Below are positions 40 through 48,572 of a stretch of 64,000 bases of DNA, one piece after another; position 1 is the first letter of the stretch; each line of letters opens with the position of its first letter. The stretch is from Haliotis cracherodii. Lineage: Eukaryota. The notes under the pieces are model-generated. The model had not been told where the DNA came from. It ran no database searches and saw only the letters and a program-made list of their open reading frames with translations. The stretch covers positions 59,148,001-59,212,000 of the forward strand of contig NW_027266275.1 of assembly GCF_022045235.1 (NCBI RefSeq), read 5' to 3'. Position numbers and translations under genes: made by a program.

Positions 40-1080
40 TACTCCCCAAAAAGTAGGGGATACACGTAAATAACGTAAAATTTCCAAGAATGTAAGAGAT
101 ATTAGTTTGTTCTACTAGTAATAGTTGTATGAAAGTGATGAACAAATTTGTAACGCATTACAAGGGGTGGTGAAGTATGACAGCAGATGTTATGACCTCC
201 AACGATGTTGAAAAACGATGTTGAAGAACGATTCGGGTAGGATGGGAAATTTTAAAGTGGACGTTTTTGGATCAGTAGTGCGTAATACCGTTACATTTTG
301 TCAAACATTCATACACTCGACAAAGCATATTGCGTATGAATCGCCCAATGGCGATTTGAGGGATCCTGTCCCACTCTTCTTGCATCACCTGGCCAAGTTC
401 AGCCAACGTGGTCTGCAGCATATGGCATTTTGGGTTTGTTGGTACCATTGCCCCAGTCTTAACATTGAACGTATTGGCCACTGCACGCATTCCAGCATGC
501 CAATAGCCCGCAGATGCCCTGCGCGATGTAGACGCTGGACGCTAGTTCATTGATAATGAATGAAGTCAAGTGAACCACAACTGTATGATAAGCAGAATCA
601 ATAAGATTGACAGAAATAATGGTCCACAGAGATTAATCGACCTTCCTTTAATGTGTCAAAATCTGGAAGGACAGCCTACGAACGTGTGTGGTGCTACTTC
701 GTGTGGCACGTGCAAACTACAGGACGTGTTCTGATGTCAAGTTTTACGGACACATCTGTTCTTGCATAGGATGTTTGTCGTCAACACCTATCTTTGTTCT
801 AATACTTGGTATTAGTTTTTATATTTCATTACCCCCAACTCTGTTTTAAGAGTATATTTGTGAACGTTTTCCTATTTTCATTTGACGTGTTCACAATAAT
901 TGAAGCGGGTGCATCTGACACATCATCAATGTTCAAGTCCAGTACAATTCCCTCTGCCAAAATTACACATTGTCTCATTCCATGCATTTCCTAAACGCTA
1001 GCTGCCACAGTCAAAACTGTGCCTTCTGTTGAGGCTGTTCTGTACCACCACCATTTTGACTTACTTTTGGGGCATACATA
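40..1080 (-). mobile_element. Internally deleted Tc1-like DNA transposon remnant
   Basis: Imperfect terminal inverted repeats (TATACTCCCCAAAAAGTAG at ~40; CTTACTTTTGGGGCATACATA at ~1060-1080). The - strand has a Tc1 C-terminus (QEEWDRIPQ...IRNM...ECL...NGITHY, 272-420) joined directly to a degraded N-terminus (LRAIGML), with the DDE core missing. Confidence 0.75.
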
Positions 1081-1582: not shown

Positions 1583-1906
1583 CATGTGGTGCAGAGCTTA
1601 GGCGTTTACCACTTATGTAAGACCCACACGCACGGGTATGGTGCTGACAAAAGTAGCGACATAATCAGGGCCAACCGGGATTCGAACCCACGATAATAGG
1701 TGCCGCTAGTATACACGTGTATCCTGCATGTAGCATGAAAAGTTATCAATGAAAGAACACAAGAAACGGTTTTATGTTATTCATATAATTAAACACAAAT
1801 ATATTCAAACAAAATAATACAAAACTGATTTTGATTTAAAATTTAAAATGTACACACTTTTTTTCATTTTCCTTATTTACAGGTATGTACAAATACAAAC
1901 ACATAT

Positions 1907-3393
1907 CTACTCCTCAATCACCTCCAGTCCCCACACAGTGACACGTGACTCCCCCTCCTCACACAGCTGATACTCTGGGGCCACCTCTGCCCCCACCCCT
2001 GCCATATCCCCTACCACGTCGCTCCAATTCACACCATTGTCCAGAACAAAATCAGGGTGGAACTTCAGTTCTCGTTCCATGTCCTTTTTCTCAGAAATGA
2101 AGGCTTGGGATTTTGTCTGCTGGAAGTTGGGCTGCAGGATATCGGGAATGTCTATGCTTGCCATCTCGGCGTCAACGCAGCGAGATAGACGACGGCTGCT
2201 TGTCCGCCATGCAGGTTTCTGTGTCCTTGTGAAAGTCTTCAACAGGATGTAGACGGTGACTACCACAGCTAAAACAGATTATTAAAGTGTGAATATTAAA
2301 ATTGGAAACTTTACAAACTGTGAAATGCGTTAGATCTTGATAGTGTGTGATTTTGAGGTACTAAAAGATTCAGAAGAGGAGGAAGTGAGAAATAACCTAC
2401 CAATTACTGCAAGTATTGCGAGAGTGACAGGACAGATGTTTCCTGGGCAAAACCACGTGACATCTGAAAGGAAACAATCCCATGTGAACTATTTCAAAAG
2501 TAACAAGATGTTCGACCTTTTACACCATGAGGGACTGATATTGGTCAGTTTCCCAGCAGTAATTTAATACGTTTACATAATGATGAGGTATTATATATAT
2601 GAAATGACATCCAACATTAAATTCAGATACGAACATTAGTTGTCGTGTGCTGTGTAATATACTCACCACGAAAAGAAACGTAGGAGGTGACGTCAGCTGA
2701 CGAGAGTATCTTAGTACTGAAACAGAGCGGGTTCAATAAATAGAGGGTTGACATATGGCATAAAGTCATCTTGTAACCATAAAGTTGTTTTGAATTAAGA
2801 TATCACCATGAAAATAATTCTATTGTGATAAGCTAAATGTCGGGCAAAAGAAAGTATACACCCATGTTTGAAGATGGCTAAAAATGAAACAAATCAAAGT
2901 GATTATTAGGGGATGATGTATTCGATATGGATATCAAAGTAATGTTTGGACCTTAACTTTGCAGAGTTTCGGCGACTGTTTTCAGTCAAGTAACGATTTG
3001 ATAACGTGTGTTAATGTTTTGGTCAAATCTATTTTTCAAGTATGCACTTTTCTTTGCCCGTTACTTTTACTTTGATATAATGACCCAAAAGTGTTGAGTT
3101 GATATTCTGTCCCAATAATGATTAGTTATTAAAACAAACTTATTTGGATTTATATGCAACGACTGATACCATCAGAGTTGAGTGAGTGAGTTGGGTTTTA
3201 ATGCCGCTTCAAGCATTATCACGGCTGGGCCACACCTACAATATATGCTTCACACGTTGTACCCATGTGGGGACTCGAAGCGGGTCTTTGGTTTGACAAG
3301 CGAAAACATAAACCACTGGCCCATACCACTGCCCCCAGCAAAATCAAGAAACTCTTACCTCGTACGAGCCGGTAGAATCCAGTTAGGAGGCAT
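1907..3393 (-). CDS. Uncharacterised 148-aa protein, copy 1 of a triplicated 3-exon gene (exons 3393-3359, 2716-2667, 2268-1907)
   Basis: GT-AG introns (donors GTAAGA and GTGAGT) with compatible phases give MPPNWILPARTSTKILSSADVTSYVSFRAVVVTVYILLKTFTRTQKPAWRTSSRRLSRCVDAEMASIDIPDILQPNFQQ...VWGLEVIEE*. Exon sizes and splice sites are kept in all three copies. Paralog differences include synonymous changes and an in-frame 15-nt indel. Confidence 0.75.
3181..3336 (-). mobile_element. Short tRNA-derived SINE in intron 1 (also at ~10888-11040 and ~19990-20148)
   Basis: Degenerate A/B boxes and ACTC-type tail; same family as 28366-28540. It sits at the same intron position in all three gene copies, so it predates the triplication. 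Confidence 0.7.
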
Positions 3394-3471
3394 CTAGGTG
3401 TTCAACACGACGGAAAACTCGAAGAGCGTGACAAGTTAGTACCATATGGGCAGACAGCTTTGTCGTGATTG

Positions 3472-3860
3472 TGACGTCATGGCACATAGTGACAATTGTG
3501 ACGTGTAACACCAGTGACGTCACGTGTTTGCGTAGACTTAACTGGGTTCCATCTTAAGCTGGCTCCCGGCTCCCTTTGCGCGTCGTCAACTTGCGATATT
3601 AAAGACGAAGTCCAGCTCCGGACTTTTCTCTTGTTTGTAAACAAACGCGCTTTTTTAGAAATCAGTATAGAACGGACAAATACAAGTATTGGGGGGCGCT
3701 TTACATATTGTTTTGCATAATTATATATATATGCTACTACAACTGCGACAGTGAGTTGCATGACAATATATATTTATACATCAAAGTGACCGTATCGCTA
3801 GCTCTCCCTTGGGCTTCGATGACAGCACGTGGAGCCGTACAACCAATGTAAACAAAGGAT
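3472..3860 (-). promoter_or_regulatory. Putative proximal promoter of gene copy 1: CRE/ATF, E-box, FOXO and C/EBP-like motif cluster
   Basis: TGACGTCA at 3472-3479 and 3515-3522, TGACGTGT at 3499, CACGTG at 3521-3526, GTAAACAA at ~3637 and ~3848, TTGCATAA at ~3713. These lie 80-460 nt upstream of the ATG and are largely conserved in copies 2 and 3. Confidence 0.6.
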
Positions 3861-5165
3861 AACTACGCAAAAACAAGTAGATTTTCACGTATTAGAATAC
3901 TACCCTTATGAACCGTAACCGTTCTTTGACTTTTGTTTATGAAAATGTGTAGACTTGTCAAACATGAAACGGATGAAAAGCATATGCAATATGTTGAATG
4001 GACTGTGAAAGATGTGATGAATCGTGACAGTCATGGCGCTTGGTCGCAGGAACTCTGGGTAGGAGAGTGACAAAAGATAGATACGAAGAGAAAGCGAGGA
4101 ACCAGCCTATGTGAACGATGAGGACGTCATTTTATTATTCATTCGTGACCAGCTCGTGCTATTCCGGGACAAGTCGTATTTTCGCAAATGACATTCATCG
4201 ATAGGGGGACGAATCTTCTTGCAGTTACTGAAAGGGGCGATTGGTAACGAATGTGGATTAGTGTGTTTCCCTAATGGAACGGGCCGTCCTCTATACAGTT
4301 ATTCCTAGACAGGAGTACAACTCCCATGTTTTCAACACAGAGTGCATGTGGAGCTGTTGATGGACTTAACGCAAATATGAAATTAGGCAGTGATGTAGAA
4401 GTATAATTTTCTCATGACATAAGCAGATATGCAGGGTTCTGTGCGTCCACTAGTCATACCCTGTTCTGCACTTAAACGATTATGTGTATTTATTATATGC
4501 AACTAATGTTGAGAATGTCTGCACAGGAAGTCATTAATTTATACTGCAAAAATATGCAACAAAATAATTTGTGCGACGAATGTAAGGTAACAAAAAACTA
4601 ATCTGCCTACAGTCCGAATGGCATGGCATTATATTAATTTATTGGTAAAGCCATGATATCAATCACAGGATTGTCTGGTCCAGACTCGATTATTTACAGA
4701 CCGCCGTCAAACACCTGGAATATTGCTGAGTGCGGCGTAAAAAAATCCAAACAAACAAACCATGTTATGGAGCCGGACAATCTCGAAATATCACGAGTAT
4801 TTGTTTTTCATCTGGAATCCTTATCTAATGTCCACTTTTGATGAAATAAAGTAAAAACGTTTTAAATATTTATGATTTGTAGCCAGTCAGAGGTGTAATT
4901 TTTTTAATCCGACAGTGCATATTGACGGACTTTCTTTCCGGACGATCTGTAGTCCCTTGGGGTGAATATCTGATATAAGACGATGGACTGATGAGGGGGC
5001 GCGGTAACGGAAGCTATGGATTCTTGCTACGCATGTGGTGGTAATAATTGATTGTCCGTCAAACATGTTCCATGGTCGGTGGGCTCAAAGGCTCCCTGTA
5101 CAAAGACAACACCGCTCTATCATGACGAGAACGTAGGTCAGCGGTGGAACAGCTATACATCTGCA

Positions 5166-5408
5166 GACCCGTGGATTCTGGGTAAAATTATAGGTCTCCA
5201 TCAACCTGCATATGTTTGTCGTAAGAGACGACTCGATGGGTAGGGTGGTCACTGGTCAGACTCGCACCATATAGGCGGTTTTGGTTGATTGCATTATCGT
5301 ATCCCAAATGCGCCGATCGGTGCTCATGATGACAATCACTGGCTTGTCTGGTCCAGACCGACGTCGTATAGGTGGAATGATTTCGGCTTTAAACAACCAA
5401 AACAAACG
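5166..5408 (+). mobile_element. ~260-bp interspersed element (GACCCGTGAAGATCC family), diverged copy
   Basis: Homologous to 22017-22265, 27449-27695, 55183-55440 and 58729-58990; (CAAA)n-like tail. Confidence 0.7.
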
Positions 5409-5539
5409 TATAGTTGACAAAGTCATCTATATCCCCAGCCCATTTTAACACGTTATGGTCCCAAACCAGGTAACTGACCCAACTTTACTCTTAGCCATTG
5501 TCAAAATAGCTGCAATGGAAATTCTAAAATAAACATTTC

Positions 5540-6185
5540 TAAAACTCCTTAATATCAAATGGCACTAGTTCAGTGTGCGCTTTATGTATAGACATGCAAT
5601 GTTTGGCAAGGAAATATTTAACACTTTATTTGTTATACTCTTTAAGTAAACCAATCCTATATTAAAACTTAAATCCAATTTGTTGTCATGAAAACATAAA
5701 CAATAAAAAAAATCTAAAAGTGCTATATATCAAAAGGCACCAGTTCAGTATGTGCCTGGTAGACATGCAAAGTTTTGTAAGAAAGTATTTAACGGTTTTT
5801 GAGTTACACCACTCCTGTAGATCCTAAGTCCAACTTATTGCCATGGAACCGTGAAAAATAAAAAAATCTAAAATTCCTAAATAGCAAGGGGCACTAGTCC
5901 AGTATGTGTCTGGTAAACATGCAAAGTTTTTGTTGGAAAGTATTGAATGGGTTTTGAGTTATGCTTCGGAAACAAACTCTACCATATAGAACCTAAGTCC
6001 AACATGTTGCAATGGAAACGTAAAAAATAAAAATTTATAAAATTCCTAAATAGCAAAAGGCACCAGTTCAGTGTGTGTCTGGTAAACATTCAAAGTTTTG
6101 TAAGAAATTATTTAACAGTTTTTGAGTTACGCTCCGGAAACGAACAGCACCCTTATAGAACCTAAGTCCAACTTGTTGCCATGGA
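5540..6185. repeat. Degenerate tandem ~160-170-bp cores, probably a Helentron/pearl-type non-autonomous element
   Basis: About four imperfect units containing GGCACYAGTTCAGT...AAAGTTTTG...GAGTTA...CCTAAGTCCAAC. Absent from the paralogous site in copy 3 (~22265-22430). A related inverted array lies at ~61740-62260. Confidence 0.55.
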
Positions 6186-7611
6186 ATCAAATCGACATGA
6201 AATAATTCCAACCCGTTAGCCCCAGTGACGTCATCGTTTACAATAATTTGTCAGTGCAATTTTAGTGATATCGTCTCTTCCTTGTTTGAATTTTGCTCCC
6301 TTTCACGACAGATATGTGAAATATTAGTTCCACTGTAAGGCTTTGACGATTGGTTCCATGGTACATACCATTAGGACATACACTAGTGGTCGTATGTCCA
6401 CGCACAATGTATAAATCATCTTCAAACAATATGCACGAGGAAAGGACCGCGAATTCAAATGGGCTTCAGCTTCGAAAATGTGCAAAATTTGTGATGCGAT
6501 CGACGGAAAGAAATATTTACTCTCACTTATACTAACTCCGACAACTTTGTGTGGTTGATATAACAGCCACTGTAAACACCGACATGTGAAACAAATCGTT
6601 AGTTCTCGACCAGAGCTACTTTCCTGCAATGTGTTTATATATAACATGCATAAGATATATTCCATCGACATCCAGGTAAACATCAGAAGACCTCCATACC
6701 ATGCCATGCACCAGGTGCTCCGGGATAGGACACGTGCCAAATACATCACCATCATTTAGGCAACTCTACAACAAAACCTGTCACTGGCTGAACGCGCGAT
6801 TTACTTTGAGCGCATGCCTTTCGATACTTTGGATAGTTTAATATCAAAGTGTTGCCTGGTAAAGAGTATAGCTGATCTGATGGTATGTCACACCTCTACT
6901 TGTATGATTTGGCACCATCACAAAAGTTTTCTGGAACTTATCTAATGATATTTGGGTTTACCTCACACATCCTGTACGCGTAAACTAGCTTTGCAGATTG
7001 TTTATTGGACCTTTCTAACCACCCTCAGTACTTCTTTGATCTCTTTCGATCGCCCTAATAAGTAAAATCTCAATTTACCGGACATCTTTAAAATATCCAC
7101 GGATCAATTTAGCGTTTCGAATGAGACATATGTCATAAATTGTAACTATATATTGCTGATGTAACTAGGCAGAAATGTAGGCCTAGATGTACCATTAGTG
7201 GTTATTTTTCTCATAACGTTGGACTCATTATCGAATTACTGTGCAGAATGTATATGAAAGGCCAGGGAAGTACTCCGTAATTTCAGTGTTTGTAACAAAC
7301 ATGGCGTCACCACGTCTATGGGCGATCGTGTCAGAATTGACAAATCTGGACTAATAACTGGTATACGTTTTGTTTTATTACTATCAAGATAATGGAAGGA
7401 TACAGAAACCCAGTTCCTGGCACGTGCATTTACATGGAAGTGTAGGCACATAGATGTAGCGAGGACGCTATCGGGATCTGTTGCCTTTCCAGCTAACTGG
7501 AGTATTTTACATGTGCAGCAACATTGCCCTTGAGACATAAGCGAAGTGATTTAGCGAATACAGATGGCATATCAATATCCATATCTGTGCCTATGGACCT
7601 AAGCGACTTTG

Positions 7612-7613
<2 letters not shown>

Positions 7614-7642
<29 letters not shown>
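7614..7642. repeat. (GT)n microsatellite
   Basis: Read directly from the sequence. Confidence 0.95.
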
Positions 7643-7645
<3 letters not shown>

Positions 7646-8381
7646 TTCCCGAGTTTATAACAGTTGGATTTGGCCTAAATTGTACGGTAACCTTGTTTCA
7701 TTTTGCCAACATTTGTGTGGGACATTTGACTGCGTTCTGTAACGTTATCACAGGCCACGCAGAATCTAAACAAACGTGACGTCGTAGAGACTAGAGTCGC
7801 GCCCCTTTGATAAGGGACTCTAGATGGACCGATGGATTGCCTCGAAGGGCGATCACTGAGGAAGATGAAAATCATGTGAAGGCATTTGCCGTTTTGACTT
7901 GCAATGTTTATGAACTGCTGTCAGAGATAAGAGTACAAATTAGACGATAAGTTTGAGGATAACATTATGATGACTATTTAACGCATATCCCAGGAAAACT
8001 TGCAATGTTCAGATAATGCTGTCGACGATATAGAACGGAACTTTCTTAACTATTTTACGCACAAACCATTTGGAAAAAACATTCACCCTTTTTACGAAAT
8101 TATACATACCATAGGAAAATTAAATTGCGAGAAGCCCGAAAATCGAACGTTCCTCATGGAGTCAAAACACGAAGTCGAGTTGCACACACCCATCTATTAT
8201 GACTACCACATGTGTGTCATGAATTCAAGCTGCGGTTACCGCATTCACCTCATCGTTTAAATTAGGTTTTTTTTCTACATGTCATTACAGGGGACGACGG
8301 AATGTCCCGTATGAATAGTGCGTTGTCTTGTCATACTTGCATATTTCTAACGTATTTTCGCATATATACTCTTTGGAAAAA

Positions 8382-8613
8382 GACCGCCTCCGTGGTCTAG
8401 TGGTAGAGCGTCCGCCGTGAGAGCGAAGGTCCGGGGTTCGATCCCCGGTCACATCATACCAAAAGATGTTAAAAGATGGTTCTTGTTGTTACCCTATCTG
8501 GCGCTCGGCAATAAGGGGCATTAAACAATCTGGTCGGCTCGGAGTCAGTATACTGTGTCAGGGAGGGCTATTCATGTTAAACTGCGGCAATAGTACAAGC
8601 AACCACACACACA

Positions 8614-8658
<45 letters not shown>
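8382..8658 (+). mobile_element. tRNA-derived SINE with (CA)n tail
   Basis: A-box TGGTCTAGTGG and B-box GGTTCGATCCC; body ACCCTRTCTGGCGCTCGGCA shared with 28025-28362, 43637-43979 (-) and 50161-50460. Confidence 0.85.
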
Positions 8659-8660
<2 letters not shown>

Positions 8661-9650
8661 TGAACGGTGAACACGGGCAAGGTGAATTGGGACTTATCTG
8701 AAAACATGACACTATATAGTTTAAGAGTATACAATATGGAAGGTTTTCCTATTTTTATTTGACTTGGCCACAAGAGTTAAAGGGGTTGCTAACGCAATAT
8801 CATTTTATAAATCCTGTACTATTCCCTCTGCCATAATTACCATTGTATTATTCAATGTATTTCCTAAACGCTAGCTGCCACAGTCGAAACTACTTATGTG
8901 TATACAGTGCCTTCTGTTGTGGTTGTTCTGTACAGCGAGATAGCACCATTGGTGACTTACTACTGTACTGTATAAAGAGTTGCCCTGTTTCCTACAATAA
9001 CCAGTGGTATTGGACATTGATCAGCTCCAGTGTCTGGAAGCGGATACAACATCAACTTTGGCCGGGGAATCACTCACTCACTCACTCGATCGCTGGTAGG
9101 CTGGAAGGGTATTATGAGTGAGTGAGTTGGGTTAACACTGCTTTGAACAATTTTCTCAGTCATATCACGCCGTGTCAACGAGATGTGGAAGACAAACCCG
9201 ATGTAAAGCAGATCTTAGGCGTTTACCGTTTAGGTAAGACCCACACGCACGGGTATGGTGCTGACAAAACTAGCGACATAATCAGGGCCAACCGGGATTC
9301 GAACCCACGATAATAGGCTTCTAAAAATCTGCACTGGGATTTGTGGCGCCTTTGATGACTGAGCCACCCGTGCCGCCAGTATACATGTGTATTTTGCATG
9401 TAGCATGAAATGTTATCAATGAAAGAACACAAGAAACGGTTCTATGTTATTCATTTAATTAAACACAAACATACTCAAACAAAATAATACAAAACTGATT
9501 TTGATTTAACATTAAAAATGTACACAGTTATTTTCATTTTCCTTATTTACAGGTATGTACAAATACAAACACACATCTACTCCTCCTCCTCCATCACCTC
9601 CAGTCCCCACACAGTGACACGTGACTCCCCCTCCTCACACAGCTGATACT

Positions 9651-11098
9651 CTAGGGCCACCTCTGCCCCAACCCTGCCATATCCCCAACCACGTCACTCC
9701 AATTCACACCATTGTCCAGACAATATTCAGGGTGGAACTTCAGTACTCGTTCAATGTCCATTTTCTGTTTTTTTGTCTGCTGGAAGTTGGGCTGCAGGAT
9801 ATCGATAATGTCTATGCTTGCCATATCGGCGTCAACGCAGCGAGAAAGACGACGGTTGCTTGTCCGCCATGCAGGTTTCTGTGTCCTTATGAAAGTCTTC
9901 AACAGGACGTAGACAGTAACTACCACAGCTGAAACAGAATATTAAAGTGTGAATATTAAAATGGGAAACTTTAGAAACTGTGAAATGCGTTAAATCTTGA
10001 TAGTGTGTGATTTTGAGGTGCTAAACGATTCAGAAGAGGAGGAAGAGAGAAATAACCTACCAATTCCTGCAAGTATTGCGAGAGTGAGAAGACAGATGTT
10101 TCCTGGGCAAAACCACGTGACATCTGAAAGAAAACAATCACATGTGTACTATTTCAAACGTAACAAGATGTTCGACCTTTTACATCATGAGGGACTGATA
10201 TTGGACATTTCCCATAAGTTTATTTAATACGTTTACATAATGATGATGTATTATATATATGAAATGACATCCAACATAGAATTCAGATACATCAAATATT
10301 CATAAATGAACATCAGTTGTCGGCTGCTGTGTAATATACTCACCACGAAAAGAAACGTAGGAGGTGACGTCAGCTGACGAGAGTGTCGTAGTACTGAAAC
10401 AGAGTGGGTTTAATAAAAAGAGGGATGATATATGGCATAAAGTCATCTTGTAACCATAAAGACTTAGTTGTTTTGAATAAAGATAATACCATGAAAATAA
10501 TTTTATTTTTATAAGCTAAATGTCGGGCAAAAGAAAGTATACATCCATGTTTGAAGATGGCTAAAAATGAAACAAACCAAAGTGATTATTAGGGGATGAT
10601 GTATTCGATATGGATATCATAGTAATGTTTGGTTCTTAACTTTGAAGAGTTTCGGCGTCTGTTTTCAGCCAAGTAACGATTTGATAATGTGTGTTAATGT
10701 TTTGGTCAAATCTATTTTTTCAAGTATGCACTTTCCTTTGCCCGTTACCTCTACTTTGACATAATGGCCCAAAAGTGTTGAGTTGATATTCTGTCCCAAT
10801 AATGATTAGTTATTTAAACTAAGTAAAAATGTTACAATTAAAGGCCCTTATTTGGATTTATATGCAACGACTGATACCATCAGGGTTGAGTGAGTTAGTT
10901 GGGTTTTAATGCCGCTTCAAGCATTATCACGGCGGGGGACACCTACAATATGCTTCACACGTTGTACCCATGTGGGGACTCGAAGCGGGTCTTCGGTTTG
11001 ACGAGCGAAAACTTAACCTACTGGCCAATACCCCTGCCCCCAGCCAAAACAAGACAATCTTACCTCGTACGAGCCGGTAGATTCCAGTTAGGAGGCAT
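9651..11098 (-). CDS. Uncharacterised 120-aa protein, copy 2 (exons 11098-11064, 10393-10344, 9928-9651)
   Basis: Same exon structure as copy 1: MPPNWNLPARTSTTTLSSADVTSYVSFRAVVVTVYVLLKTF...DMAGLGQRWP*. A 1-nt deletion in a G-run shortens the C-terminus relative to copy 1. Confidence 0.7.
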
Positions 11099-11175
11099 CT
11101 TGGTGTTCAAAACGACGAAAACTCGAAGAGCGTGACAAGTTAGTACCATACAGGCAGACAGCTTTGTCGTGATTG

Positions 11176-11470
11176 TGACGTCATGGCACATAGTGACAAT
11201 TGTGACGTGTAACACCAGTGACGTCACGTGTTTGCGTAGACTTAGCTGGGTTCCAGCTTAAGCTGGCTCCCGGCTCCCTTTGCGCGTCGTCAACTTGCGA
11301 TATTGAAGACGAGGTCCAGCTTCGAACTCCGGCGCAGTGGTGACTCAGCATAAGACCGTTGCCACAAGTTAATTTGCATATCAAGTGACCGGACTTTTCT
11401 CTTGTTTGTAAACAGTATAGAGCGGACAAATACAAGTATTTGGGGGCGTTTTACATATTGTTTTGCATAA
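11176..11470 (-). promoter_or_regulatory. Putative promoter of copy 2: CRE cluster plus ARE/AP-1 and octamer
   Basis: Two TGACGTCA, CACGTG, TGACTCAGCA at 11341-11350, ATTTGCAT at ~11372, TTGCATAA at ~11463. Confidence 0.6.
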
Positions 11471-14400
11471 TTATATAGATATGCTACTACAACTGCGACA
11501 GTGAGTTGCATGACAATATATATTAACACATCAAAGTGACCGTATCGCTAGCTCTCCGTTGGGCTTCGATGACAGCACGTGGATCCGTACAACCAATGTA
11601 AACAAAGGATAACTACGCAAAAACAAGTAGATTTTCACGTATTAGGATACTTTCTTTATGAACCGTAACCATTCTTTGACATTTGTTTATGAAAATGTGT
11701 AGACTTGTCAAACATGAAACGGATGAAAAGCATAGGCAATATGTTGAATGGACTGTGAAAGATGTGACGAATCGTCACAGTCATGGCGCTTGCCTGTGGC
11801 AGAGGTACCATGATGGTCGCATGGAACTCTGTGTAGGAGAGTGACAAAAGATAGATGCGTAGAGAAAGCGAGGAATCAGCCTATGTGAACGATGAGGACG
11901 TCATTGTATTATTCATTCGTGACCAGCTCGTGCTATTCCGGGACAAGTCGTATTTTCGCAAATGACATTCATCGATAGTGGGACGAGTCTTCTTGCGGGT
12001 TACGGAAAGGGGCGAGTGGTGACGAATGTGGATTTTTGTGTTGCACTTATGGAACGGGCAGTCCTCTATACAGTTATTCCTAGACAGGATTCCAACTCCC
12101 ATGTTTTCAACACAGATAGAGTGCATGTGGAGCTGTTGATGGACTGAACGCAAATATGAAATTAGGCAGAGATGTAGAAATATAATTTGCTCATGACATA
12201 AGCAGATATGCAGGGATTATGCGTACACTAGTCATACCCTGCACTCCACGTAAACGATTATGTGTATTTATTATATGCAACTGATGTTGAGAATGTCTGC
12301 ACAGGAAGTCGTGAATTTATACTGCAAAATTTTGCAACAAAATAATTTGTGCCACAAAAATATGGTAACCAAACTAATCTGCCTACAGTCCGAATGGCAT
12401 GGCATAATATTAATTTATTGGTAAAGCCATGATATCAATCACCATTTTTTACCATGCGGAAGATGCAAATCGGATCAGATTCGGATTGAGAACGGGAGAA
12501 TGGGGACGAATTCGGCTGGAAACGGTTGAATCGGGACGCTTCCTGAAAAATATCTGTTTGTTTGTGAATTTCTCGCCGCCATGAATAACAGGTTCTTGAT
12601 CAGAATTTGATGAATTTTAATCGGGAATGGTCCTATCAAGGACTGCAGTAAAAATCCTGAATGTGTGACTGAGCCCTAAAGGACTGGATTGGATTGGATT
12701 GCCTTGAAGTGCGATCACTGACAAAGTTGAAAATCATGGATAAGCGATTGCCGTTTCGACCTGCAATGATTATGTACTGTTGTAGAGATAAGAGAACAAA
12801 TTAGACGATAAATTTGAGGATAACATAATGATGACTATTTTACACAAATTCCAGGAAAACTTGCAATGTTTAGGTACTGTTGTCATAGATGATAATTACA
12901 GTTTCGACAATTAAGAACGGAATTTTCTTAACTATTTTACGCACAAACCATTTGGAAAACTATTTATTTATGGCCATAAATTAGAGAGGTTATCACGCGG
13001 GTGTGTTTTGGATTGGTAAATGTCCTAAGTTGGTAATATTCATCGCCTTCACTCCCACCACAGGACATTTACCACCCAACAGCACACCATATTTTATAAC
13101 TTTGCATGGAATCGAACTTTCCATATGGAGTCAAAACACGACGTTGAGCTGCACACATCTACCAAGAATAAGAAAATCTGTTGTAACTTCCACATGTGAA
13201 TCATGAATTCAAGCTGCCGTTACCGCATTCCCCTCATCGTTCTATATAGTTTTTTCTCTCTATATGTCATTACTGGGAACGACGGAATGTCCCGTAAGAA
13301 AAGTCTTCCAATAGTGCTCCAACCAGTCATACATGCACACATCGAACGTATTTCCGCATATATACTCTAAACAAAATAGCGGATACACAGAAATAATGTA
13401 AAATGTCCAAGAATGTAAGAGGTATTAGTTTGTCGTAATAGTTGTATGATAGTAATGAACGAATTTGTAATGCGTTACAAGGGGTAGTGAAGATTGACAG
13501 CAGATGTTATGACCGCCAACGTACGATGTTGAAGGACGATAATATTAAGATGGGAAATTTCAGAGTGGACGTTTTTGGATCAGTAGTGCGTTATCCGGTT
13601 ACGATTTGTCAAACATTCATTCACTCCAAGACGCAAACTGCGTATGAATCTCCGAAATGCGATTTGAGGGAGCCTGTTCCACTCCTCTTGCTACACCTGG
13701 CCAAGTTCGACCAACGTTGTCGGCAGCATATGACGTTGGTTCGATCACACGTCTCCCTACCATGTCCAAGACGTGTTCATTTAGGAGATAAACCTATTGT
13801 GTTTTGAAATTTGATGTAGTCCCACTGTAGAATAGATACCTCTTTATTATAATTTTGAACCGAGCGCTTTAGCACAGTAGGTTTATCTCCATTCTACCAT
13901 GACGGCAACAAGGCTTTAAAAACGGCGCTCTTTTGCAACGCGTAATAACACAGGTGCACAGGTGCAATCTTAGAACAATCTGCAAAGTGGTCACATGTAG
14001 TTATATATGTAACAATTATTATTAAAGTTCAAGATTAAAAAACACCATAGTCGTGAGTAGTTCATAATAAGTATTGAAAACACATAGTTTTTCAAACAGA
14101 AGTTGACAAATAACACTCCTAACTTAATCCAAAGGGAGATGTTTTAATTTCTATCAAACTGTTATACACTGTGGACTGGCTGTCGTTTCTCGGAATTTGT
14201 GAGAGAGGTCATTTCTTGGAAATCGAACATGCCATCATTTCTATTGTAGGGGTGACGGGTAATAGAAAAAGGTTTTCAAATGCTAAACGAATATATTTCT
14301 ACAGCACACTTTATGAATTAACATTCTAATATACATTTAACATGTCTAAGAGTTATTAGATAGATAGCAATTACCTCCAGTAAACAATAATAACATCAAA

Positions 14401-15463
14401 GTAAATGCCTCTCCACCCCGAGCTTGGATGTGGCAGAACCTGACCTACATCACGGTTACTCACACCTCACAGCTGTCAATGGCTGACGATCATTTGTTTA
14501 CATTAACTAGATCTAGTTAAAAGAAGCAAGATGACAACCCCGATCTATGATGTGGTTCAACATTTACCTGTAGATTTACTGAGATTGATCGAGCCTGCGG
14601 GTACATCCATATGATTACTAATGGAACTGAGTATGACTGAACAGCCGCTGTTTAGGCTGCAGACGAGCCGGATATTTTGAAACGAGGAATCTGCATGGTG
14701 TGACCTGTCAATTTCAAGATTTCACGGATCCAAAGCCAAATAGTGACAGAACTTAGACATTTCTGGTCCAGAAATAGTAGGTCGTGTATGATTTTCATAA
14801 TTGTGCGTGTTCTGAAATGCAAGTTTGATAAGCTTTGACCTTCAGTTGGGGCATTGTTTTCGTGGACTTTCGAAGGGGAGTGTTTTCTGATGCACTTTCA
14901 AATCCCCTCCTGCCAAATTCTAACGGTGGTGGTTGACGGAGATGGCAATGGATATCGATCAGAAAAAGGTTTGTAAACACCATGTTGTCATGAATAAAAT
15001 GTCTTCAAACACATTTCATTATGTTATATTTCACTTTCATTGTCGGTTGTTTCAATAATGAAATTACCAATACCTGTTCGTGGGTTTCAGAAAAAGTTAC
15101 CAAAAAAATGAACAATTATTATTTTCTCAACAAAATTTATTAGATATTACTCTTTCACTTATTTTGAATGTGTGAATCTTTGAATTATACCTCTGGATCC
15201 CCACCCTGAATTCAGAACCGTCCTAACGTGTCCCGGTTGTCACTATATCTGCACTGCACTTAGTTATGGCTGCCAAAGAAATTGTTAACAGTAAGAGTGC
15301 TGTTAAAGAATTGCAGGAAACCAGAAGACAACCCAGTACTGATGCACAGTGTGATGCTGTTCAACGTTAACATGTTGACTAACTATCCCTGCTGGTGTGA
15401 TGTTGTTTTTTCAAACAAATTTTTATAATGTTATATTTTACTTTCATTGTCGGTTGTTTCAAT

Positions 15464-16050
15464 GAGGAAATAGCTTAAATTGTTCCGATTGTGGTCCATC
15501 TTCCCGAGGCAAGTGAGTTAACTGACTATAAAAGTCCAGTTTCCACCCTTGCCGAACTAGGCTGGTATTATGGAGTCTATGCATAGTCCAATCAAAGTCG
15601 CGCTCCGAAATCGAAATCCGGTTCGTAAAGTGTCATGCAGATTTCGGTCGACTGCAGAATTTGCAAAGTATGTGCACCGCTAACTCGTTGTCAACAGATA
15701 TTTTCTATATCTTTTCATGTTTTTAATCAAGGTGCTCACGTGATTTGATGCACTTCGCGATGTAAGACTCGTTTGATCACAATATAGATCTTGATTATCG
15801 ATCAGATCGTCTTGACTGGGCGCCACCGTTTTGTTTGAAGCAAATGCAAGTGATACGAGAGGTTGAATCTGATAGGTCAATAGGAGAGGCATAGAAAGGA
15901 TATTACTCGTAATAGCCACTGGTGGCGCTACGATCGAGCCCAGGAATTCCAGCCTAGTTCGGCAAGGGTGGAAATTGGACTTTTAAAGTCAATTAACACA
16001 CTTGCCTCGGGAAGATGGACCACAATCGGAACAATTTAAGCTATTTCTCT
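15464..16050. mobile_element. MITE-like element with ~100-bp terminal inverted repeats
   Basis: GAAATAGCTTAAATTGTTCCGATTGTGGTCCATCTTCCCGAGGCAAG...CCGAACTAGGCTGG is mirrored at ~15950-16047. A diverged relative lies at ~40445-40830. Confidence 0.8.
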
Positions 16051-17313
16051 CTTGCCTCGGGAATATGATTCTGGTCACCATAGAACATTTCTCAAACAGT
16101 TTCATAAACATTTCATTTCATGTCATCATCGAAGTAGTCAGGGTTGCGGCCTAGAACGCCCCAAACATCCGATATCAAACTACCGTATTTCCTCTATTTG
16201 ACACTACGCCGTTTATTAATTTTGCGAGAGCCCTTGACTCGGCGTGTATTAGAGACCTGGGCCCCGTTCCTCAAAGCGATCTTAGCGCTAAGATGATCGT
16301 AAGCCTATGTTAAAGTATGGGATATCTGGCTGGTATTAGAGACCCAGCGTGTATTAGAGGAAATATAGATATGTTTTACAGTTCATAAGGGGACGATCGA
16401 TCGGCAGCCATTTTCTGTGAATCGATATGTGTAGGCTATCTATGTATTCATACGCACGTTTTTTTGTGAAAAGGCTTAATATTTGAAAGGGGTTTCCGTA
16501 GCAAAAAGGAAATCTCTATTTAACCAATCAGAATCAAGCATTCATCAATGTCATGGTAGAATTCGACGTCACCAGAACCGACCACGCCTATCAAGGCATT
16601 GCAAAATGAATCGGGACTCATCTGAAATCATGAGACGTGACCAGCGACGATTTCGAGGTTATGTACATCATTGACGTATGTGTGAGAAGTTGCACAACAC
16701 GTGGCCATCGAGCATGGAGATGGGCTGCATGTAGACGATTTCTAATCATCTGACCCGTACCTCCTATTCCAGTAGCCTGACGATAGTTTGTATCAGTTTG
16801 ATTCACCTTTTGAGCTCGATTTCGTAGAGCCTGGTTTCGGATCAATCGGTCCTGTAATCTTTTTACCCCTGAACGGGGTAGATCGTCAACATTTTGGGTT
16901 TGCTGGTACCCCTGCCATAGTCTTAACATTGGCCACTGCACGCTGACTTCCAAGCATGCCAATAGCCTTAAACGCTCCGCGCGATGCAGACGCTGAATCG
17001 CAAGTTAATTGACAAACATTGAATGCAACCATGTAAATCACAACTGTATGATAAGAATTAATAGGATTGACATAAATAATGGTCCACGGAGATTACTTGA
17101 CCTTTCTTGAAAGCTTCAAAATCAGGAATGACAGCCTACGCACGTGTATGGTGCTACTCCGTGTGGCACGTGAAACTATAGGAAGTTTTACAGATACATC
17201 TGTTCTAGCATAGGATGTTTGTCGGCAACACTTATCTTTGTTCTAATACTTGGTATTAATATTTATATTTCATTACCCCCAACTGTGTTGTAAGAGTATA
17301 TTTGTGAAAGTTT

Positions 17314-17963
17314 CTGTCCCCCGCCGCGCGAAAGCGCGAAGCGGGGGAGATAGTATTCACGACCGTCCGTACGTACGTTCTACCTGTTTGTTGCCGCGAT
17401 ATCTCAAGAACTAAACACTGGATTGTCTTCATATTTGGAACTATGGTGTATATACAGACACCGCAGACACCAGTCGGTTTTGGTGACCTTGACCTCATTT
17501 TCAAGGTCACAGCAGGCAAATCTGCTTTTGGAGTTGGAAAACGGTGTTGCAGCGATATCTCAAGAACTAAACACTGGATTGTTTTCATATTTGGAACTAT
17601 GGTGTATATACAGACTCCGCAGACACCAGTCGGTTTTGGTGACCTTGACCTCATTTTCAAGGTCACAGCAGTCAAATCTGCTTTTGGAGTGTGAAAACGG
17701 TGTTGCCGTGATATCTCAAGAACCAAACACTGGATTGTCTTCATATTTGGAACTATGGTGTATATAAAGACTCCGCAGACACCAGTCGGTTTTGGTGACC
17801 TTGACCCCATTTTCAAGGTCACAGCAGGCAAATCTGCTTTTGGAGTTGGAAAACGGTATTTGCCGCGATATCTCAAGAACTAATCGCTGGATTGTCTTCA
17901 TATTTGGTACTATGGTGTATATACAGGCGGGGGGACATTTTGTCACTTTGTGACAAATACTTG
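17314..17963 (+). mobile_element. pearl/DINE-1-like Helentron-associated element with 156-bp core repeats
   Basis: Subterminal IR TGTCCCCCGCC (17315) / GGCGGGGGGACA (17926-17937), 5' hairpin, GTCC/GTAC-type microsatellite, cores starting at 17401, 17557, 17713 and 17870, and 3' hairpin TGTCAC-TTT-GTGACA. Inserted in a T-run; the empty site is visible at ~865-875. Confidence 0.85.
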
Positions 17964-18760
17964 TCCTATTTTCATTTGACGTGTCGACAATAATTGAAGC
18001 GGGTGCATCTGACACATCATCAATGTTCAAGTCCAGTACAATTCCCCCTGCCAAAATTACACATTGTCTCATTCCATGCATTTCCTAAACGCTAGCTGCC
18101 AGTCAAAACTGTGCCTTCTGTTGGGGCTGTTCTGTACCACCACCATTTTTGACTTACTTTTGGGGAATACATACTGTACAATGAGTTGCCCCGTGTCCTT
18201 CATTAACCAGCGGCCTTAGACATTTATCAACCCCAGTGTCTAGAAGCGGATACAACATCAACTTTGACCCAGGTATCACTCACTCACTCACTGGTAGGCT
18301 GGAAGGGTATTGTGAGTGAGTGAGTTTGGTTTGGACAGTGTGTCTCAGTCATATCACGGCGTGTCAGCGAGTTTAGGCGTTTACCACTTATGTAAGACCC
18401 ACACGCACGGGTATGGTGCTGACAAAACTAGCGACATAATCAGGGCCAACCGGGATTCGAACCCACGATAATAGGTGCCGCTAGTATACACGTGTATCCT
18501 GCATGTAGCATGAAAGATATCAACGAAAGAACACAAGAAACGGTTCTATGTTATTCATTTAATTAAACACAAACATATTCAAACAAAATAATACAAAACT
18601 GATTTTGATTTAAAGTTAAAAATGTACACAGTTATTTTCATTTTCCTTATTTACAAGTATGTACAAATACAAACACATATCTACTCCTCCTCCTCCTCCT
18701 CCATCACCTCCAGTCCCCACACAGTGGCACGTGACTCCCCCTCCTCACACAGCTGATACT

Positions 18761-20203
18761 CTAGGGCCACCTCTGCCCCAACCCTGCCATATCCCCAACC
18801 ACGTCACTCCAATTCACACCATTGTCCAGACAATATTCAGGGTGGAACTTCAGTTCTCGTTCAATGTCCATTTTCTGGGTTTTTGTCTGCTGGAAGTTGG
18901 GCTGCAGGATATCGATAATGTCTATGCTTGCCATCTCGGCGTCAACGCAGCGAGATAGACGACGGTTGCTTGTCCGCCATGCAGGTTTCTGTGTCCTTAT
19001 GAAAGTCTTCAACAGGACGTAGACAGTAACTACCACAGCTGAAACAGAATATTAAAGTGTGAATATTAAAATGGGAAACTTTAGAAACTGTGAAATGCGT
19101 TAAATCTTGATAGTGTGTGATTTTGAGGTACTAAATGATTCAGAAGAGGAGGAAGAGAGAAATAACCTACCAATTCCTGCAAGTATTGCGAGAGTGAGAA
19201 GACAGATGTTTCCTGGGCAAAACCACGTGACATCTGAAAGAAAACAATCACATGTGTACTATTTCAAACGTAACAAGATGTTCGACCTTTTACATCATTA
19301 AGGGACTGATATTGGACATTTCCCATGAGTTTATTTAATACGTTTATATAATGATGATGTATTATATATATGAAATGACATCCAACATAGAATTCAGATA
19401 CATCAAATATTCATTAATGAACATCAGTTGTCGGCTGCTGTGTAATATACTCACCACGAAAAGAAACGTAGGAGGTGACGTCAGCTGACGAGAGTGTCGT
19501 AGTACTGGAACAGAGTGGGATTAATAAAAAGAGGGATGACATATGGCATAAAGTCATCTTGTAACCATAAAGTTGTTTTGAATAAAGATAATAGCATGAA
19601 AATAATTTTATTGTGATAAGCTAAATGTCGGGCAAAAGAAAGTATACATCCATGATTGAAGATGGCTAAAAATGAAACAAACCAAAGTGATTATTAGGGG
19701 ATGATGTATTCAATATGGATATCAAAGTAATGTTTGGTTCTTAACTTTGAAGAGTTTCGGCGTCTGTTTTCAGCCAAGTAACGATTTGATAATGTGTGTT
19801 AATGTTTTGGTCAAATCTATTTTTCAAGTTTGCACTTTCATTTGCCCGTTACCTCTACTTTGACATAATGATCCAAAAGTGTTGAGTTGATATTCTGTCC
19901 CAATAATGATTAGTTATTTAAACTAAGTAAAAATGTGACAATTAAAGGCCCTTAATTGGATTTATATGCAACGACTGCTACCATCAGGGTTGAGTGAGTT
20001 AGTTGGGTTTTAATTCCGCTTCAAGCATTATCACGGCGGGGGACACCTACAATATGCTTCACACGTTGTACCCATGTGGGGACTCGAAGCGGGTCTTCGG
20101 TTTGACGAGCGAAAACTTAACCCACTGGCCCATACCACCTCCCCCAAGCAAAAACAAGACAATCTTACCTCGTACGAGCCGGTAGATTCCAGTTAGGAGG
20201 CAT
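18761..20203 (-). CDS. Uncharacterised 120-aa protein, copy 3 (exons 20203-20169, 19504-19455, 19038-18761)
   Basis: Nearly identical to copy 2, with intact splice sites and the same C-terminal frameshift. Confidence 0.7.
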
Positions 20204-47153: not shown

Positions 47154-48572
47154 TACTCACACGCTAAAGAAACGCAAGTGGTTTTAAGCAAATAGGTAAC
47201 AACACGGAGCCATAAATTGATACGATTTTTAGCATGTAGTGAAGCCTGATGGTGTTATCAATATTTTTGGTTGTATTTTTGAAGCCCCGAGTAAAAACGC
47301 AACATAAAAGACGAATCGCCAAAACGCACCATTTCAATGAATATGTGGGTATCATGCACCCTTTTCTCGCGAAACTGTAGTTGGTATAGACTGTGGCCCA
47401 TTTTTGGACCTACCACTCCTTGGTCAACAATGCCACGCCTAACTCAAATTCAGAGAAACCAGGCTATCGGACGTTTTGAAGCTGGAGAGTCTGTCCAAGA
47501 TGCTGCCCGTCATTTCAACGTTAACATAACCACAATTTACCGTCTCCTGCATCGATACAATGCTACACAGACCACAGATGACCTTCCACGGAGCGGTCGT
47601 CCTAGGGTCACCACACCTCGACAAGATCGGCAGATTACCCGTCAACACCAGCGACATCCGTTCCTAACTGCAAGTGAAAGTTCTTGACAGACCATAGGAA
47701 CATAATCGACACATTAGCCGGGACACTGTGTTCCGACGTCTCCGTTCCAACAACCTCAGATGTCGCCGACCAGCACGTTGTCCTGTTCTCCAACCACGGC
47801 ATCGACAAGCACGACTTCAGTGGGCAAAGGGGCGTCATCGTGAGTGGAGGCGTGTCATCTTCTCTGATGAAAGAAAGTCGCTTTTGTGTCTCCCATGCAG
47901 ACGGAAGAGTCCGAGTTTGGCGGCGTCGAGATGATCGTTTCGCTGACAGAAACATTGTGGAAAGGGATCCATGGGGTGGACCTAGCGTCATGATATGGGC
48001 AGGGATTGGACTTAATGCGAGACTTGGACCCATGTGCTTTCTGAATGTTGGTCAAGGTCGGGGACACGGCGTCACTGCTCAGCGATATATCGACCGAGTG
48101 ATCAGACCCCATGTTGTTCCATTTTTTGCACAACATCAACAACACATTTTCCAGCAGGACAACGCTCGTCCCCACGTTGCCAGAGCTACCATGGCCTTTC
48201 TGCAACAACACACCATCCGTGTTCTACCGTGGCCAGCCCTCAGCCCTGATCTGAACCCCATCGAACACTTGTGGGATGAGGTTCAAAGGCGTTTGCACAA
48301 TGTGCGCCAAGTCCGTACAACTGCCGATGAACTACGCACAGCTGCTCTGGATGTGTGCAGGAGGATCTCTAGGGCCTTCACAAATCGTCTGATCCACTCA
48401 ATGTACAGGAGATGTGTGGCAGTGATCAATGGTAATGGTGGTCACACCAGGTATTGACTGACAGTTTGGGTATTGACCCAAATTGGCCCTATTAGTATAT
48501 CTTGTCTTTACTGCTGAAAATAAATAACATGTTTACTGCATACTCGACTTGCGTTTCTTTTGCGCGTGAGGA
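47154..48572 (+). mobile_element. Full-length Tc1 (DD34E-type) transposon
   Basis: TIRs TACTCACACGCTAAAGAAACGCAAGT / ACTTGCGTTTCTTTTGCGCGTGAGGA flanked by TA; encloses a transposase gene. Confidence 0.92.
47430..48457 (+). pseudogene. Tc1 transposase with two frameshifts (~47680 and ~47870)
   Basis: MPRLTQIQRNQAIG...DLPRSGRPRVTT; WRRVIFSDE/ESRF; FQQDNARPH; WPALSPDLNPIEHLW; NGGHTRY*. The motifs are split over three ORFs. Confidence 0.9.

What the first reader, a model, noticed from the sequence alone, without database searches (positions are those of the whole stretch)
1907..20203. Triplicated compact gene of unknown function, only partly visible in the ORF track
Seen: three copies of a 3-exon - strand gene (35-nt and 50-nt coding exons plus a terminal exon) splice in frame to 148/120/120-aa proteins. 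Each has a hydrophobic helix (YVSFRAVVVTVYILLKTF), a basic segment (PAWRTSSRRLSRC), IDIxDILQP, ERxLKFHP and an acidic WSDV motif. Synonymous differences (GTC/GTT, ACC/ACT, CTA/CTT, AGC/AGT, GTA/GTT) and a 15-nt in-frame indel favour this frame. I cannot assign it to a named family. Inference: a small, amplified, inducible regulator, possibly membrane-associated; WSDV fits the WxxV LIR pattern, but such short motifs are common by chance. The first duplication unit runs off the window start, so more copies may exist.
Basis: partly seen in the sequence, partly recalled or inferred. Interest (0 to 1): 0.8.

Follow-up and report, generated by a model that had tools for sequence, protein, structure and literature searches.

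The report
Abalone-only small membrane-protein gene array
This is a real, spliced gene found only in abalones.

Summary
The triplication is real. The model lacks a fourth coding exon of 63 nt (copy 1: 2401-2463) between the 50-nt and terminal exons.

- **Products:** 169/141/141 aa, not 148/120/120. They match NCBI models from Haliotis cracherodii: P0001 for copy 1, P0007 for copy 2.
- **RNA evidence:** one spliced contig joins 2667 to 2463. Other contigs stop exactly at 2269 and 3359.
- **Protein:** the missed exon supplies half of a 26-residue membrane helix. The protein is bitopic, probably N-out/C-in, with a Ser/Thr-rich N-terminus, a CxxxxC loop, a basic juxtamembrane segment and a disordered acidic tail with conserved short motifs.
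- **Array:** six tandem copies in the genome, three just before the window, plus two short paralogs on another contig.
- **Broken tails:** copies 2 and 3 and the outermost copy share a 1-nt loss that removes the conserved C-terminus.
- **Homology:** searches of 1.84 and 5.8 billion proteins found only Haliotis relatives. There is no Pfam, PDB or literature match.
- **Function:** unknown. My best guess, about 0.3, is a membrane-anchored adaptor.

The finding is ordinary to modest in interest.

The parts
3359..3393 (-). Copy 1, coding part of exon 1 (35 nt, ATG at 3393). The transcribed 5' UTR reaches at least 3525.
   Evidence: the peptide is a substring of P0001, and GT follows the exon. X3 record 28 lies on 3359-3525 and then continues for 28 letters that do not fit the intron.
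2667..2716 (-). Copy 1, exon 2 (50 nt). It contains a TGACGTCA at 2688.
   Evidence: AG/GT borders, peptide in P0001; joint 2463->2667 in X1..
2401..2463 (-). It encodes the CxxxxC loop and the N-terminal half of the membrane helix.
   Evidence: AG/GT borders, peptide in P0001. X1 joint 2463->2667, ends CT..AC, which is GT..AG on the - strand; invariant residues D29, T31, C34, G36, I38, C39.
1907..2268 (-). Copy 1, terminal coding exon (stop at 1907-1909). It encodes the rest of the helix, the basic segment and the full acidic tail. The 3' UTR runs to about 1770 or beyond.
   Evidence: contigs X10 record 9 and X3 records 26/27 end exactly at 2269, and contigs begin at 1667-1770.
11064..11098 (-). 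Copy 2, exon 1 coding part
   Evidence: peptide in P0007
10344..10393 (-). Copy 2, exon 2
10061..10123 (-). Copy 2, exon 3 (63 nt)
9651..9928 (-). Copy 2, terminal coding exon, cut short. One G is missing from the G run at about 9666-9669, which leads to a TAG stop at 9651-9653.
   Evidence: The product equals P0007 (141 aa).
20169..20203 (-). Copy 3, exon 1 coding part
19455..19504 (-). Copy 3, exon 2
19171..19233 (-). Copy 3, exon 3 (63 nt)
18761..19038 (-). Copy 3, terminal coding exon, with the same 1-nt loss (G run at about 18776-18779) and an early TAG stop
1990..1994 (-). Copy 1: the intact G5 run. Its one-base-shorter version in copies 2, 3 and u0 shifts the frame and removes the conserved C-terminal motifs.
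   Evidence: sequence; alignment; translations

Best explanation
Shown:
- The window comes from black abalone (Haliotis cracherodii). It holds three of six tandem copies of a protein-coding gene with four coding exons (35, 50, 63 nt and a terminal exon).
- Relatives were found only in abalones.
- AlphaFold2 predicts one confident membrane helix (residues 40-65) and leaves everything else disordered.

Inferred from the sequence:
- The protein has no signal peptide.
- About 38 Ser/Thr-rich residues lie outside the membrane. They carry an NxS/T site in some species and end in an invariant C-x4-C loop next to the membrane.
- After the helix comes a strongly basic segment with an invariant Leu-Ser-Arg (RRLSR in most members).
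- Then comes a roughly 90-residue acidic tail (pI about 4.1). It has four conserved short blocks: IDIPDIL, NWSDVVGDM, EYQLCEE and VTVWGLEVIEE.
- By the positive-inside rule the tail faces the cytosol.

Most likely mechanism, inferred and at about 0.3: a membrane-anchored adaptor. The disordered tail would recruit cytosolic partners, such as sorting or trafficking machinery and perhaps a basophilic kinase at the RRLS site, through these short linear motifs.

The array grew by very recent duplication or gene conversion. Copies 2 and 3 (141 aa) lack the last two motifs, so they are either tail-less variants or decaying copies.
For: - **Gene structure:**, exon by exon. All exon peptides of copy 1 are in P0001 and all those of copy 2 are in P0007.
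- **Splicing:**. X1 shows the joint 2463->2667, and contigs end at 2269 and 3359.
- **Array:**. There are six copies on C12, and three share an identical block of at least 2122 bp that holds the whole gene.
- **Restricted range:**. Ten clusters were found, all Haliotis, in searches of 5.8 and 1.84 billion proteins.
- **Architecture:** one search gives the helix at 40-65 and mean pLDDT below 50 elsewhere. One search gives hydropathy 2.3-3.0, charge 0 to +1 before the helix, +5 to +8 in the 22 residues after it, and -8 to -23 in the rest of the tail.
- **Conserved blocks:**. The short C5 paralog keeps the exon-3 loop, the helix, PAWR..RRLSR, DIPDI and a W..DVI-acidic C-terminus.
- **Constraint:**. 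dN/dS is 0.33-0.57 against the C5 paralogs and 0.13 between the two C5 copies.
Against: - There is no functional evidence of any kind.
- Within the array dN/dS is 0.56-1.07, and coding identity is about the same as intron identity. Recent constraint is therefore weak or masked by gene conversion.
- Half of the array copies have lost the conserved C-terminus.
- The motif readings (acidic di-leucine-like DIPDIL, RRLS kinase site, WxxV) are pattern resemblances from general knowledge and were not tested.
- The runs laid are only guessed to be RNA, and they come from related species, not this one.
- Only run X1 shows exon 3 in a junction directly.
Confidence: 0.6

Rival explanations
1. It is a young, fast-evolving orphan gene family with little or no conserved biochemical role. 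It is transcribed and perhaps translated, but the array copies drift almost neutrally and several are already decaying.
For: - dN/dS is 0.56-1.07 among array copies.
- CDS identity is 0.93-0.95 against 0.92-0.93 for introns.
- Three of the six copies carry the frame-shifting 1-nt loss.
- No relatives were found outside one genus.
- The protein is almost wholly disordered.
Against: - The frame is open and the same motif blocks are kept in four Haliotis species.
- They are also kept in a paralog on another contig, with dN/dS 0.33-0.57. The two C5 copies give 0.13.
- All indels among full-length members are in frame.
- Spliced contigs come from three studies.
Confidence: 0.2
2. It is an accessory subunit of an ion pump or channel, working like the FXYD or KCNE proteins, or a small pore-forming bitopic protein. 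These are also short N-out single-pass proteins with a basic juxtamembrane segment that can be phosphorylated.
For: - Size, inferred topology and an RRLS-type site after the helix.
- Language-model neighbours are small bitopic proteins such as influenza M2, at scores of 0.78-0.80. The tool states these scores are below significance.
Against: - Neither family's Pfam model appears, even at E<=10.
- There is no PDB sequence match.
- The long acidic tail with conserved motifs is not a feature of those families (my own knowledge).
Confidence: 0.1
3. One reading: a 3-exon transcript that skips the 63-nt exon and gives a 148/120-aa protein with only a short hydrophobic patch, acting as a soluble or peripheral LIR-bearing regulator.
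For: Skipping 63 nt keeps the frame. Twenty-three joints were not listed, so a minor skipped isoform is not excluded.
Against: - The only listed junction at 2667 goes to 2463.
- In X1 the depth over exon 3 (44) is similar to that over the 5' part of the terminal exon (50-62).
- All ten public models include the exon.
- The exon holds six invariant residues, and its equivalent is kept in the C5 paralog.
Confidence: 0.05
4. It is a transposon-borne or virus-derived ORF, copied along with a mobile element.
For: The duplication units contain SINE-like high-copy repeats and Tc1/mariner-like fragments (depth table; ORF at 272-490, judged by eye).
Against: - The gene has three spliceosomal introns.
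- It has no transposase, RT or integrase match.
- It is found at only two genomic places in this genome.
- The high-copy repeats lie in the introns and spacers, not in the exons.
Confidence: 0.02

Closest known systems
NCBI/UniRef 'uncharacterized protein' models of Haliotis: H. cracherodii P0001, P0007, P0008 and P0010; H. rufescens LOC125382652 and LOC125382656; H. rubra LOC124262118; three H. asinina proteins
   Same: These are the same genes or their orthologs and paralogs. P0001 is 99% identical to the terminal exon of copy 1 and contains all four of its exon peptides, and P0007 does the same for copy 2. In the tree, the outermost copy u0 pairs with LOC125382652, and copies 1 and 2 group with LOC125382656.
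   Different: Nothing differs in substance. Copy 3 differs from P0007 by a few residues.
FXYD (phospholemman-type) and KCNE small bitopic regulators of pumps and channels
   Same: A short N-out single-pass protein without an obvious signal peptide, with a basic juxtamembrane segment that has an RRLS-like site. This is a resemblance in design only, from my own knowledge.
   Different: There is no match to either Pfam family at E<=10. There is no FXYD motif. The roughly 90-residue acidic tail with conserved motifs has no counterpart in those families.
Membrane-anchored cargo adaptors with W-acidic or Y-acidic motifs (calsyntenin-1, SKIP, JIP1; PMC6214655)
   Same: A disordered acidic cytosolic tail with conserved Trp and Tyr residues among Asp/Glu. 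In the long forms there are two Trp-containing blocks.
   Different: The paper describes the W-acidic motif as a Trp directly flanked by Asp/Glu (for example EWD, SKIP TNLEWDDSAI). Here the Trp sits in NWSD and VWGLE, with no acidic residue directly beside it. This is not a match to the described motif.
Taxonomically restricted ('orphan') tandem gene families
   Same: The family is restricted to one genus, short, disordered, fast-evolving and amplified in tandem with nearly identical copies.
   Different: It is not a single-species novelty. It is shared by at least four Haliotis species, and several lineages predate their split.

Membership tests
Haliotis LOC125382656-like uncharacterized protein family | Significant full-length sequence similarity to the annotated members | tested here: met
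   E values from 1.8e-72 to 2.1e-33; profile E values from 6e-97 to 1e-47; exon peptides are identical to P0001 and P0007.
Haliotis LOC125382656-like uncharacterized protein family | Shared architecture: CxxxxC loop, one membrane helix, PAWR..LSR basic segment, IDIPDI block and a W-containing acidic C-terminus | tested here: met
   Copy 1 has all of these features. Copies 2 and 3 lack the last two tail blocks because of the 1-nt loss.
FXYD family (Pfam ATP1G1_PLM_MAT8) | Match to the family profile or the FXYD motif before the helix | tested here: not met
   The family is not listed in hmmscan at E<=10 for seven family proteins or exons.
KCNE family (Pfam ISK_Channel) | Match to the family profile | tested here: not met
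   The family is not listed at E<=10.
LIR-bearing autophagy receptor or adaptor | Core [W/F/Y]xx[L/I/V] with acidic residues before it, conserved across the family | tested here: inconclusive
   WSDV or WGDV is kept in all nine long forms. The short paralog has WRLD at the aligned place. In this species the three residues before the Trp are G-V-N, which are not acidic.
LIR-bearing autophagy receptor or adaptor | Binding to Atg8/LC3-family proteins | not testable with these tools
   This needs a binding assay.
Kinesin-1 W-acidic cargo adaptors | Trp directly flanked by Asp/Glu (for example EWD), as described in PMC6214655 | tested here: not met
   the Trp residues lie in NWSD and VWGLE.
Transposable-element or viral gene | Transposase, RT, integrase or a viral protein domain; many dispersed copies | tested here: not met
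   There is no such Pfam hit. Matches occur at only two genomic places.

The most novel reading that the evidence does not exclude
This would be a genus-restricted membrane adaptor family whose tandem array makes two kinds of product. Full-length proteins would carry the conserved C-terminal motifs. Naturally tail-less forms (copies 2, 3 and u0) would act as decoys or modulators. The array would be kept uniform by gene conversion and switched on through the TGACGTCA sites at its 5' end, serving some abalone-specific process such as stress, immunity or reproduction.
Probability: 0.08. Interest if true: 0.5.

Novelty: new member of a known kind. Interest (0 to 1): 0.3.

Why it matters
The interest is modest.
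- It documents a lineage-restricted, tandemly amplified small membrane protein family in an endangered abalone. Public databases hold only unnamed models for it, and I found no paper.
- It is a clean case for studying how orphan genes spread and decay: three identical copies, three frame-shifted copies, and a likely gene-conversion tract in the tail.
- For the scan itself, it shows that an in-frame model built by eye can silently skip a micro-exon whose length is a multiple of three. Here that exon decides whether the protein is read as membrane-spanning.

Tried and rejected
- **Pfam** on the terminal exons and on four family proteins gave only sub-threshold noise: DUF6222, DUF7916, TNFR_16_TM, Wzy_C_2 and H_PPase, all far below the gathering scores.
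- **PDB** profile search gave nothing at E<=10.
- **ESM Atlas**: the best scores were 0.81-0.87, which the tool says shuffled proteins often reach. I treat them as no evidence.
- **Profile search of 1.84 billion representatives**: the only non-Haliotis hit was P0011, a 1015-aa repeat protein matching profile positions 104-137 five times at E 4.8e-5. I rejected it as a repeat-inflated chance match to 'DNGISWSNIVG'.
- **Fold search:** the AlphaFold2 model has mean pLDDT 47.9. I ran no fold search because matches to such a model are meaningless.
- **Literature search** for the three LOC identifiers found 0 papers.
I therefore had no ortholog DNA, and cross-species dN/dS could not be computed. Only paralogs within this genome were compared.
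- I did not retype those letters, and redid the calculation from stored files and coordinates.
- **No joined model:** Exons were translated and checked one by one, and full-length searches used the database proteins P0001 to P0010.
- **Flanking DNA:** ORF lists of the 20 kb before the array and of window 24-64 kb showed no informative neighbour, apart from transposase-like fragments and the renalase gene noted by another reader.
Full report
**What the window is**

The window contains no N. The terminal-exon peptide of copy 1 is 99% identical to a 169-aa NCBI/UniRef "uncharacterized protein" of Haliotis cracherodii, the black abalone (P0001). The genome tool places the window at G000:C12:59148001-59212000.

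**Checking the observation**

- Direct-repeat analysis finds three units with start-to-start spacing of about 7.7 and 9.1 kb across 1-22 kb.
- A three-way alignment of the - strand gene regions has 95% mean column identity.
For copy 1 they are a 35-nt first coding exon (3393..3359), a 50-nt exon (2716..2667) and a terminal exon (2268..1907).
- The 15-nt in-frame indel and the listed synonymous differences are visible.

The alignment also shows a conserved block between the 50-nt and terminal exons, bounded by a polypyrimidine tract plus AG on one side and GTAGGT on the other. It is a 63-nt exon: copy 1 at 2463..2401, copy 2 at 10123..10061, copy 3 at 19233..19171.

I translated each exon on its own, without joining them. 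Every exon of every copy has AG/GT borders. All exon peptides of copy 1 are substrings of P0001, and all those of copy 2 are substrings of P0007, a 141-aa H. cracherodii protein. The products are therefore 169, 141 and 141 aa, not 148/120/120.

**RNA evidence**

No run is on record as RNA, and none comes from this species with a high share of the sampled words. I laid four runs on window 1600-3900.

- Run X2 behaves as genomic DNA: one contig spans 1695-3208.
- Runs X1, X3 and X10 come from three studies and three coded organisms, and their contigs are about 90-95% alike to the window. They behave as spliced RNA.
- X1 has a joint from 2463 to 2667 with ends CT..AC, which is GT..AG on the - strand. 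That is exon 2 joined to the 63-nt exon.
- X10 record 9 and X3 records 26 and 27 end exactly at 2269 and continue for 205 and 96 unlaid letters.
- X3 record 28 lies on 3359-3525 and continues for 28 letters.

The exon borders at 2268/2269 and 3359 are thus supported, and the 5' UTR is at least 132 nt. Only X1 shows exon 3 directly.

**The array is larger than the window**

A six-frame search of the whole assembly finds six copies on C12 between 59127.7 and 59168.2 kb, all on the - strand. Each has all four exons. In order they are:

| Copy | Product | Note |
|---|---|---|
| u0 | P0008, 161 aa | Outermost and most divergent copy |
| uA | as copy 1 | 7402-bp unit |
| uB | as copy 1 | 7402-bp unit |
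| copy 1 | 169 aa | In the window |
| copy 2 | 141 aa | In the window |
| copy 3 | 141 aa | In the window |

- uA, uB and copy 1 share a perfectly identical block of at least 2122 bp that contains the whole gene.
- Two short paralogs lie 52 kb apart on contig C5. They correspond to P0010 (127 aa) and have an equivalent exon 3 and a shorter terminal exon.

**Truncated copies**

- Copies 2 and 3 and u0 have one G fewer in a G5 run (copy 1 positions 1990-1994).
- Copies 2 and 3 then hit a TAG stop after six altered residues. u0 reads on in the wrong frame.
- The orthologs in H. rufescens, H. rubra and H. asinina keep the full tail. So does LOC125382652, which pairs with u0 in the tree.
- The nucleotides after the shift are 96-97% identical to copy 1 even in u0, whose other parts are only 82-86% identical. 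This suggests gene conversion, but I cannot rule out an assembly error in the homopolymer.

**What the protein looks like**

- AlphaFold2 with the nine-sequence alignment gives one confident helix, residues 40-65, and pLDDT below 50 everywhere else.
- The most hydrophobic 19-residue window scores 2.3-3.0 on the Kyte-Doolittle scale.
- The N-terminal part has net charge 0 to +1 and is 23-32% Ser/Thr.
- The 22 residues after the helix carry +5 to +8. The rest of the tail carries -8 to -23, with pI about 4.1.
- By the positive-inside rule (established knowledge) the N-terminus faces outward or into the lumen and the tail faces the cytosol.
- H. rubra and H. asinina have an NxS/T site in the N-terminal part.

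Invariant columns include D29, T31, C34, G36, I38 and C39 (the C-x4-C loop encoded by the missed exon). They also include L77, S78 and R79 (RRLSR in most members), I88 and D89 (the IDIPDIL block), and W131, D133, V134, V135, G136 and D137. The C5 paralog keeps the loop, the helix, PAWR..RRLSR, DIPDI and a W..DVI-acidic C-terminus, but lacks the middle of the tail.

**Family range**

- A profile of nine members run against 1.84 billion representative proteins returned only P0001, P0010 and one spurious repeat protein.
- Word-seeded searches of 5.8 billion proteins returned ten clusters, all Haliotis and all "uncharacterized".
- There is no Pfam family above noise and no PDB sequence match.
- ESM Atlas neighbours score below the level that shuffled sequences reach.
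- No paper mentions the LOC identifiers.

**Selection**

- Among array copies, dN/dS over the 80-85 codons before the frameshift is 0.56-1.07.
- Coding identity is about equal to intron identity: 0.93-0.95 against 0.92-0.93.
- Against the C5 paralogs dN/dS is 0.33-0.57, and between the two C5 copies it is 0.13.

The case for constraint therefore rests on three things: the open frame kept in four species, the in-frame indels, and the blockwise conservation pattern.

**How it most likely works**

Shown: a spliced, abalone-restricted gene with four coding exons in a six-copy array, encoding a protein with one predicted membrane helix and disordered flanks.

Inferred: N-out/C-in topology, and a cytosolic tail made of short linear motifs. 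My best mechanistic guess, at about 0.3, is a membrane-anchored adaptor whose tail recruits cytosolic partners. The candidate readings below are pattern resemblances from general knowledge, not tests.

- DIPDIL resembles an acidic di-leucine-type sorting signal.
- RRLS resembles a basophilic-kinase site.
- The Trp blocks do not fit the published W-acidic motif, in which Trp is directly flanked by Asp/Glu (PMC6214655).
- The LIR reading is inconclusive.

**Verdict**

The genes are already modelled in public annotation but uncharacterised. Interest is 0.3.

**Procedural notes**

- Read laying was given 2301 letters.

Noticed in passing
window 1600-1753, 2832-2908, 3140-3293, 3602-3900: In all four runs, summed contig depth in these stretches is in the hundreds to over 100,000, against about 5-60 in the exons. 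They are high-copy repeats in intron 1 and in the gene's flanks; the one at 3179-3330 looks like a tRNA-derived SINE by eye. The stretch at 3602-3900 overlaps the 'dense bZIP motif cluster' noted by another reader, so part of that cluster is repeat-derived.
   Followed up: partly
window 2688, 10365, 19476 and 3472, 3515, 11176, 11219, 20281, 20324: A perfect TGACGTCA palindrome sits inside coding exon 2 of every copy. Two more sit within 125 nt upstream of each ATG. RNA-type contigs reach 3525, so those two lie in or at the edge of the 5' UTR, not clearly in an untranscribed promoter.
   Followed up: partly
G000:C12:59127700-59148000 (loci L013, L014, L015): Three further copies of the gene lie just before the window. 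Two have a CDS identical to copy 1, in 7402-bp units. One is divergent (P0008, 161 aa) and has a longer intron 1 and an unrelated 5' region.
   Followed up: yes
L007 (G000:C5:3498769-3501927) and L011 (G000:C5:3551206-3554358): Two nearly identical short paralogs (P0010, 127 aa) lie 52 kb apart on another contig. They keep the loop, helix, basic segment, DIPDI block and acidic W-containing C-terminus, but lack the middle of the tail.
   Followed up: partly
window 1907-2002 and its equivalents in copies 2, 3 and u0: The roughly 95 nt after the frameshift site are 96-97% identical between copy 1 and all frame-shifted copies. This holds even for u0, which is only 82-86% identical elsewhere. It is a possible gene-conversion tract, or a nucleotide-level constraint.
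   Followed up: partly
window 17389-17860: A 156-nt unit is repeated three times in tandem at 96% identity. It creates a 206-aa ORF on the - strand in the spacer between copies 2 and 3.
   Followed up: no
window 47684-48457 (+) and 272-490 (-): There are ORFs that look like Tc1/mariner transposase, by eye only: a 257-aa ORF and a short C-terminal fragment. They were not run against Pfam.
   Followed up: no
window 7600-7650 and 8600-8700: There are (GT)n/(CA)n microsatellites in the spacer between copies 1 and 2, seen as poly-Cys/Val and poly-His/Thr ORF translations.
   Followed up: no
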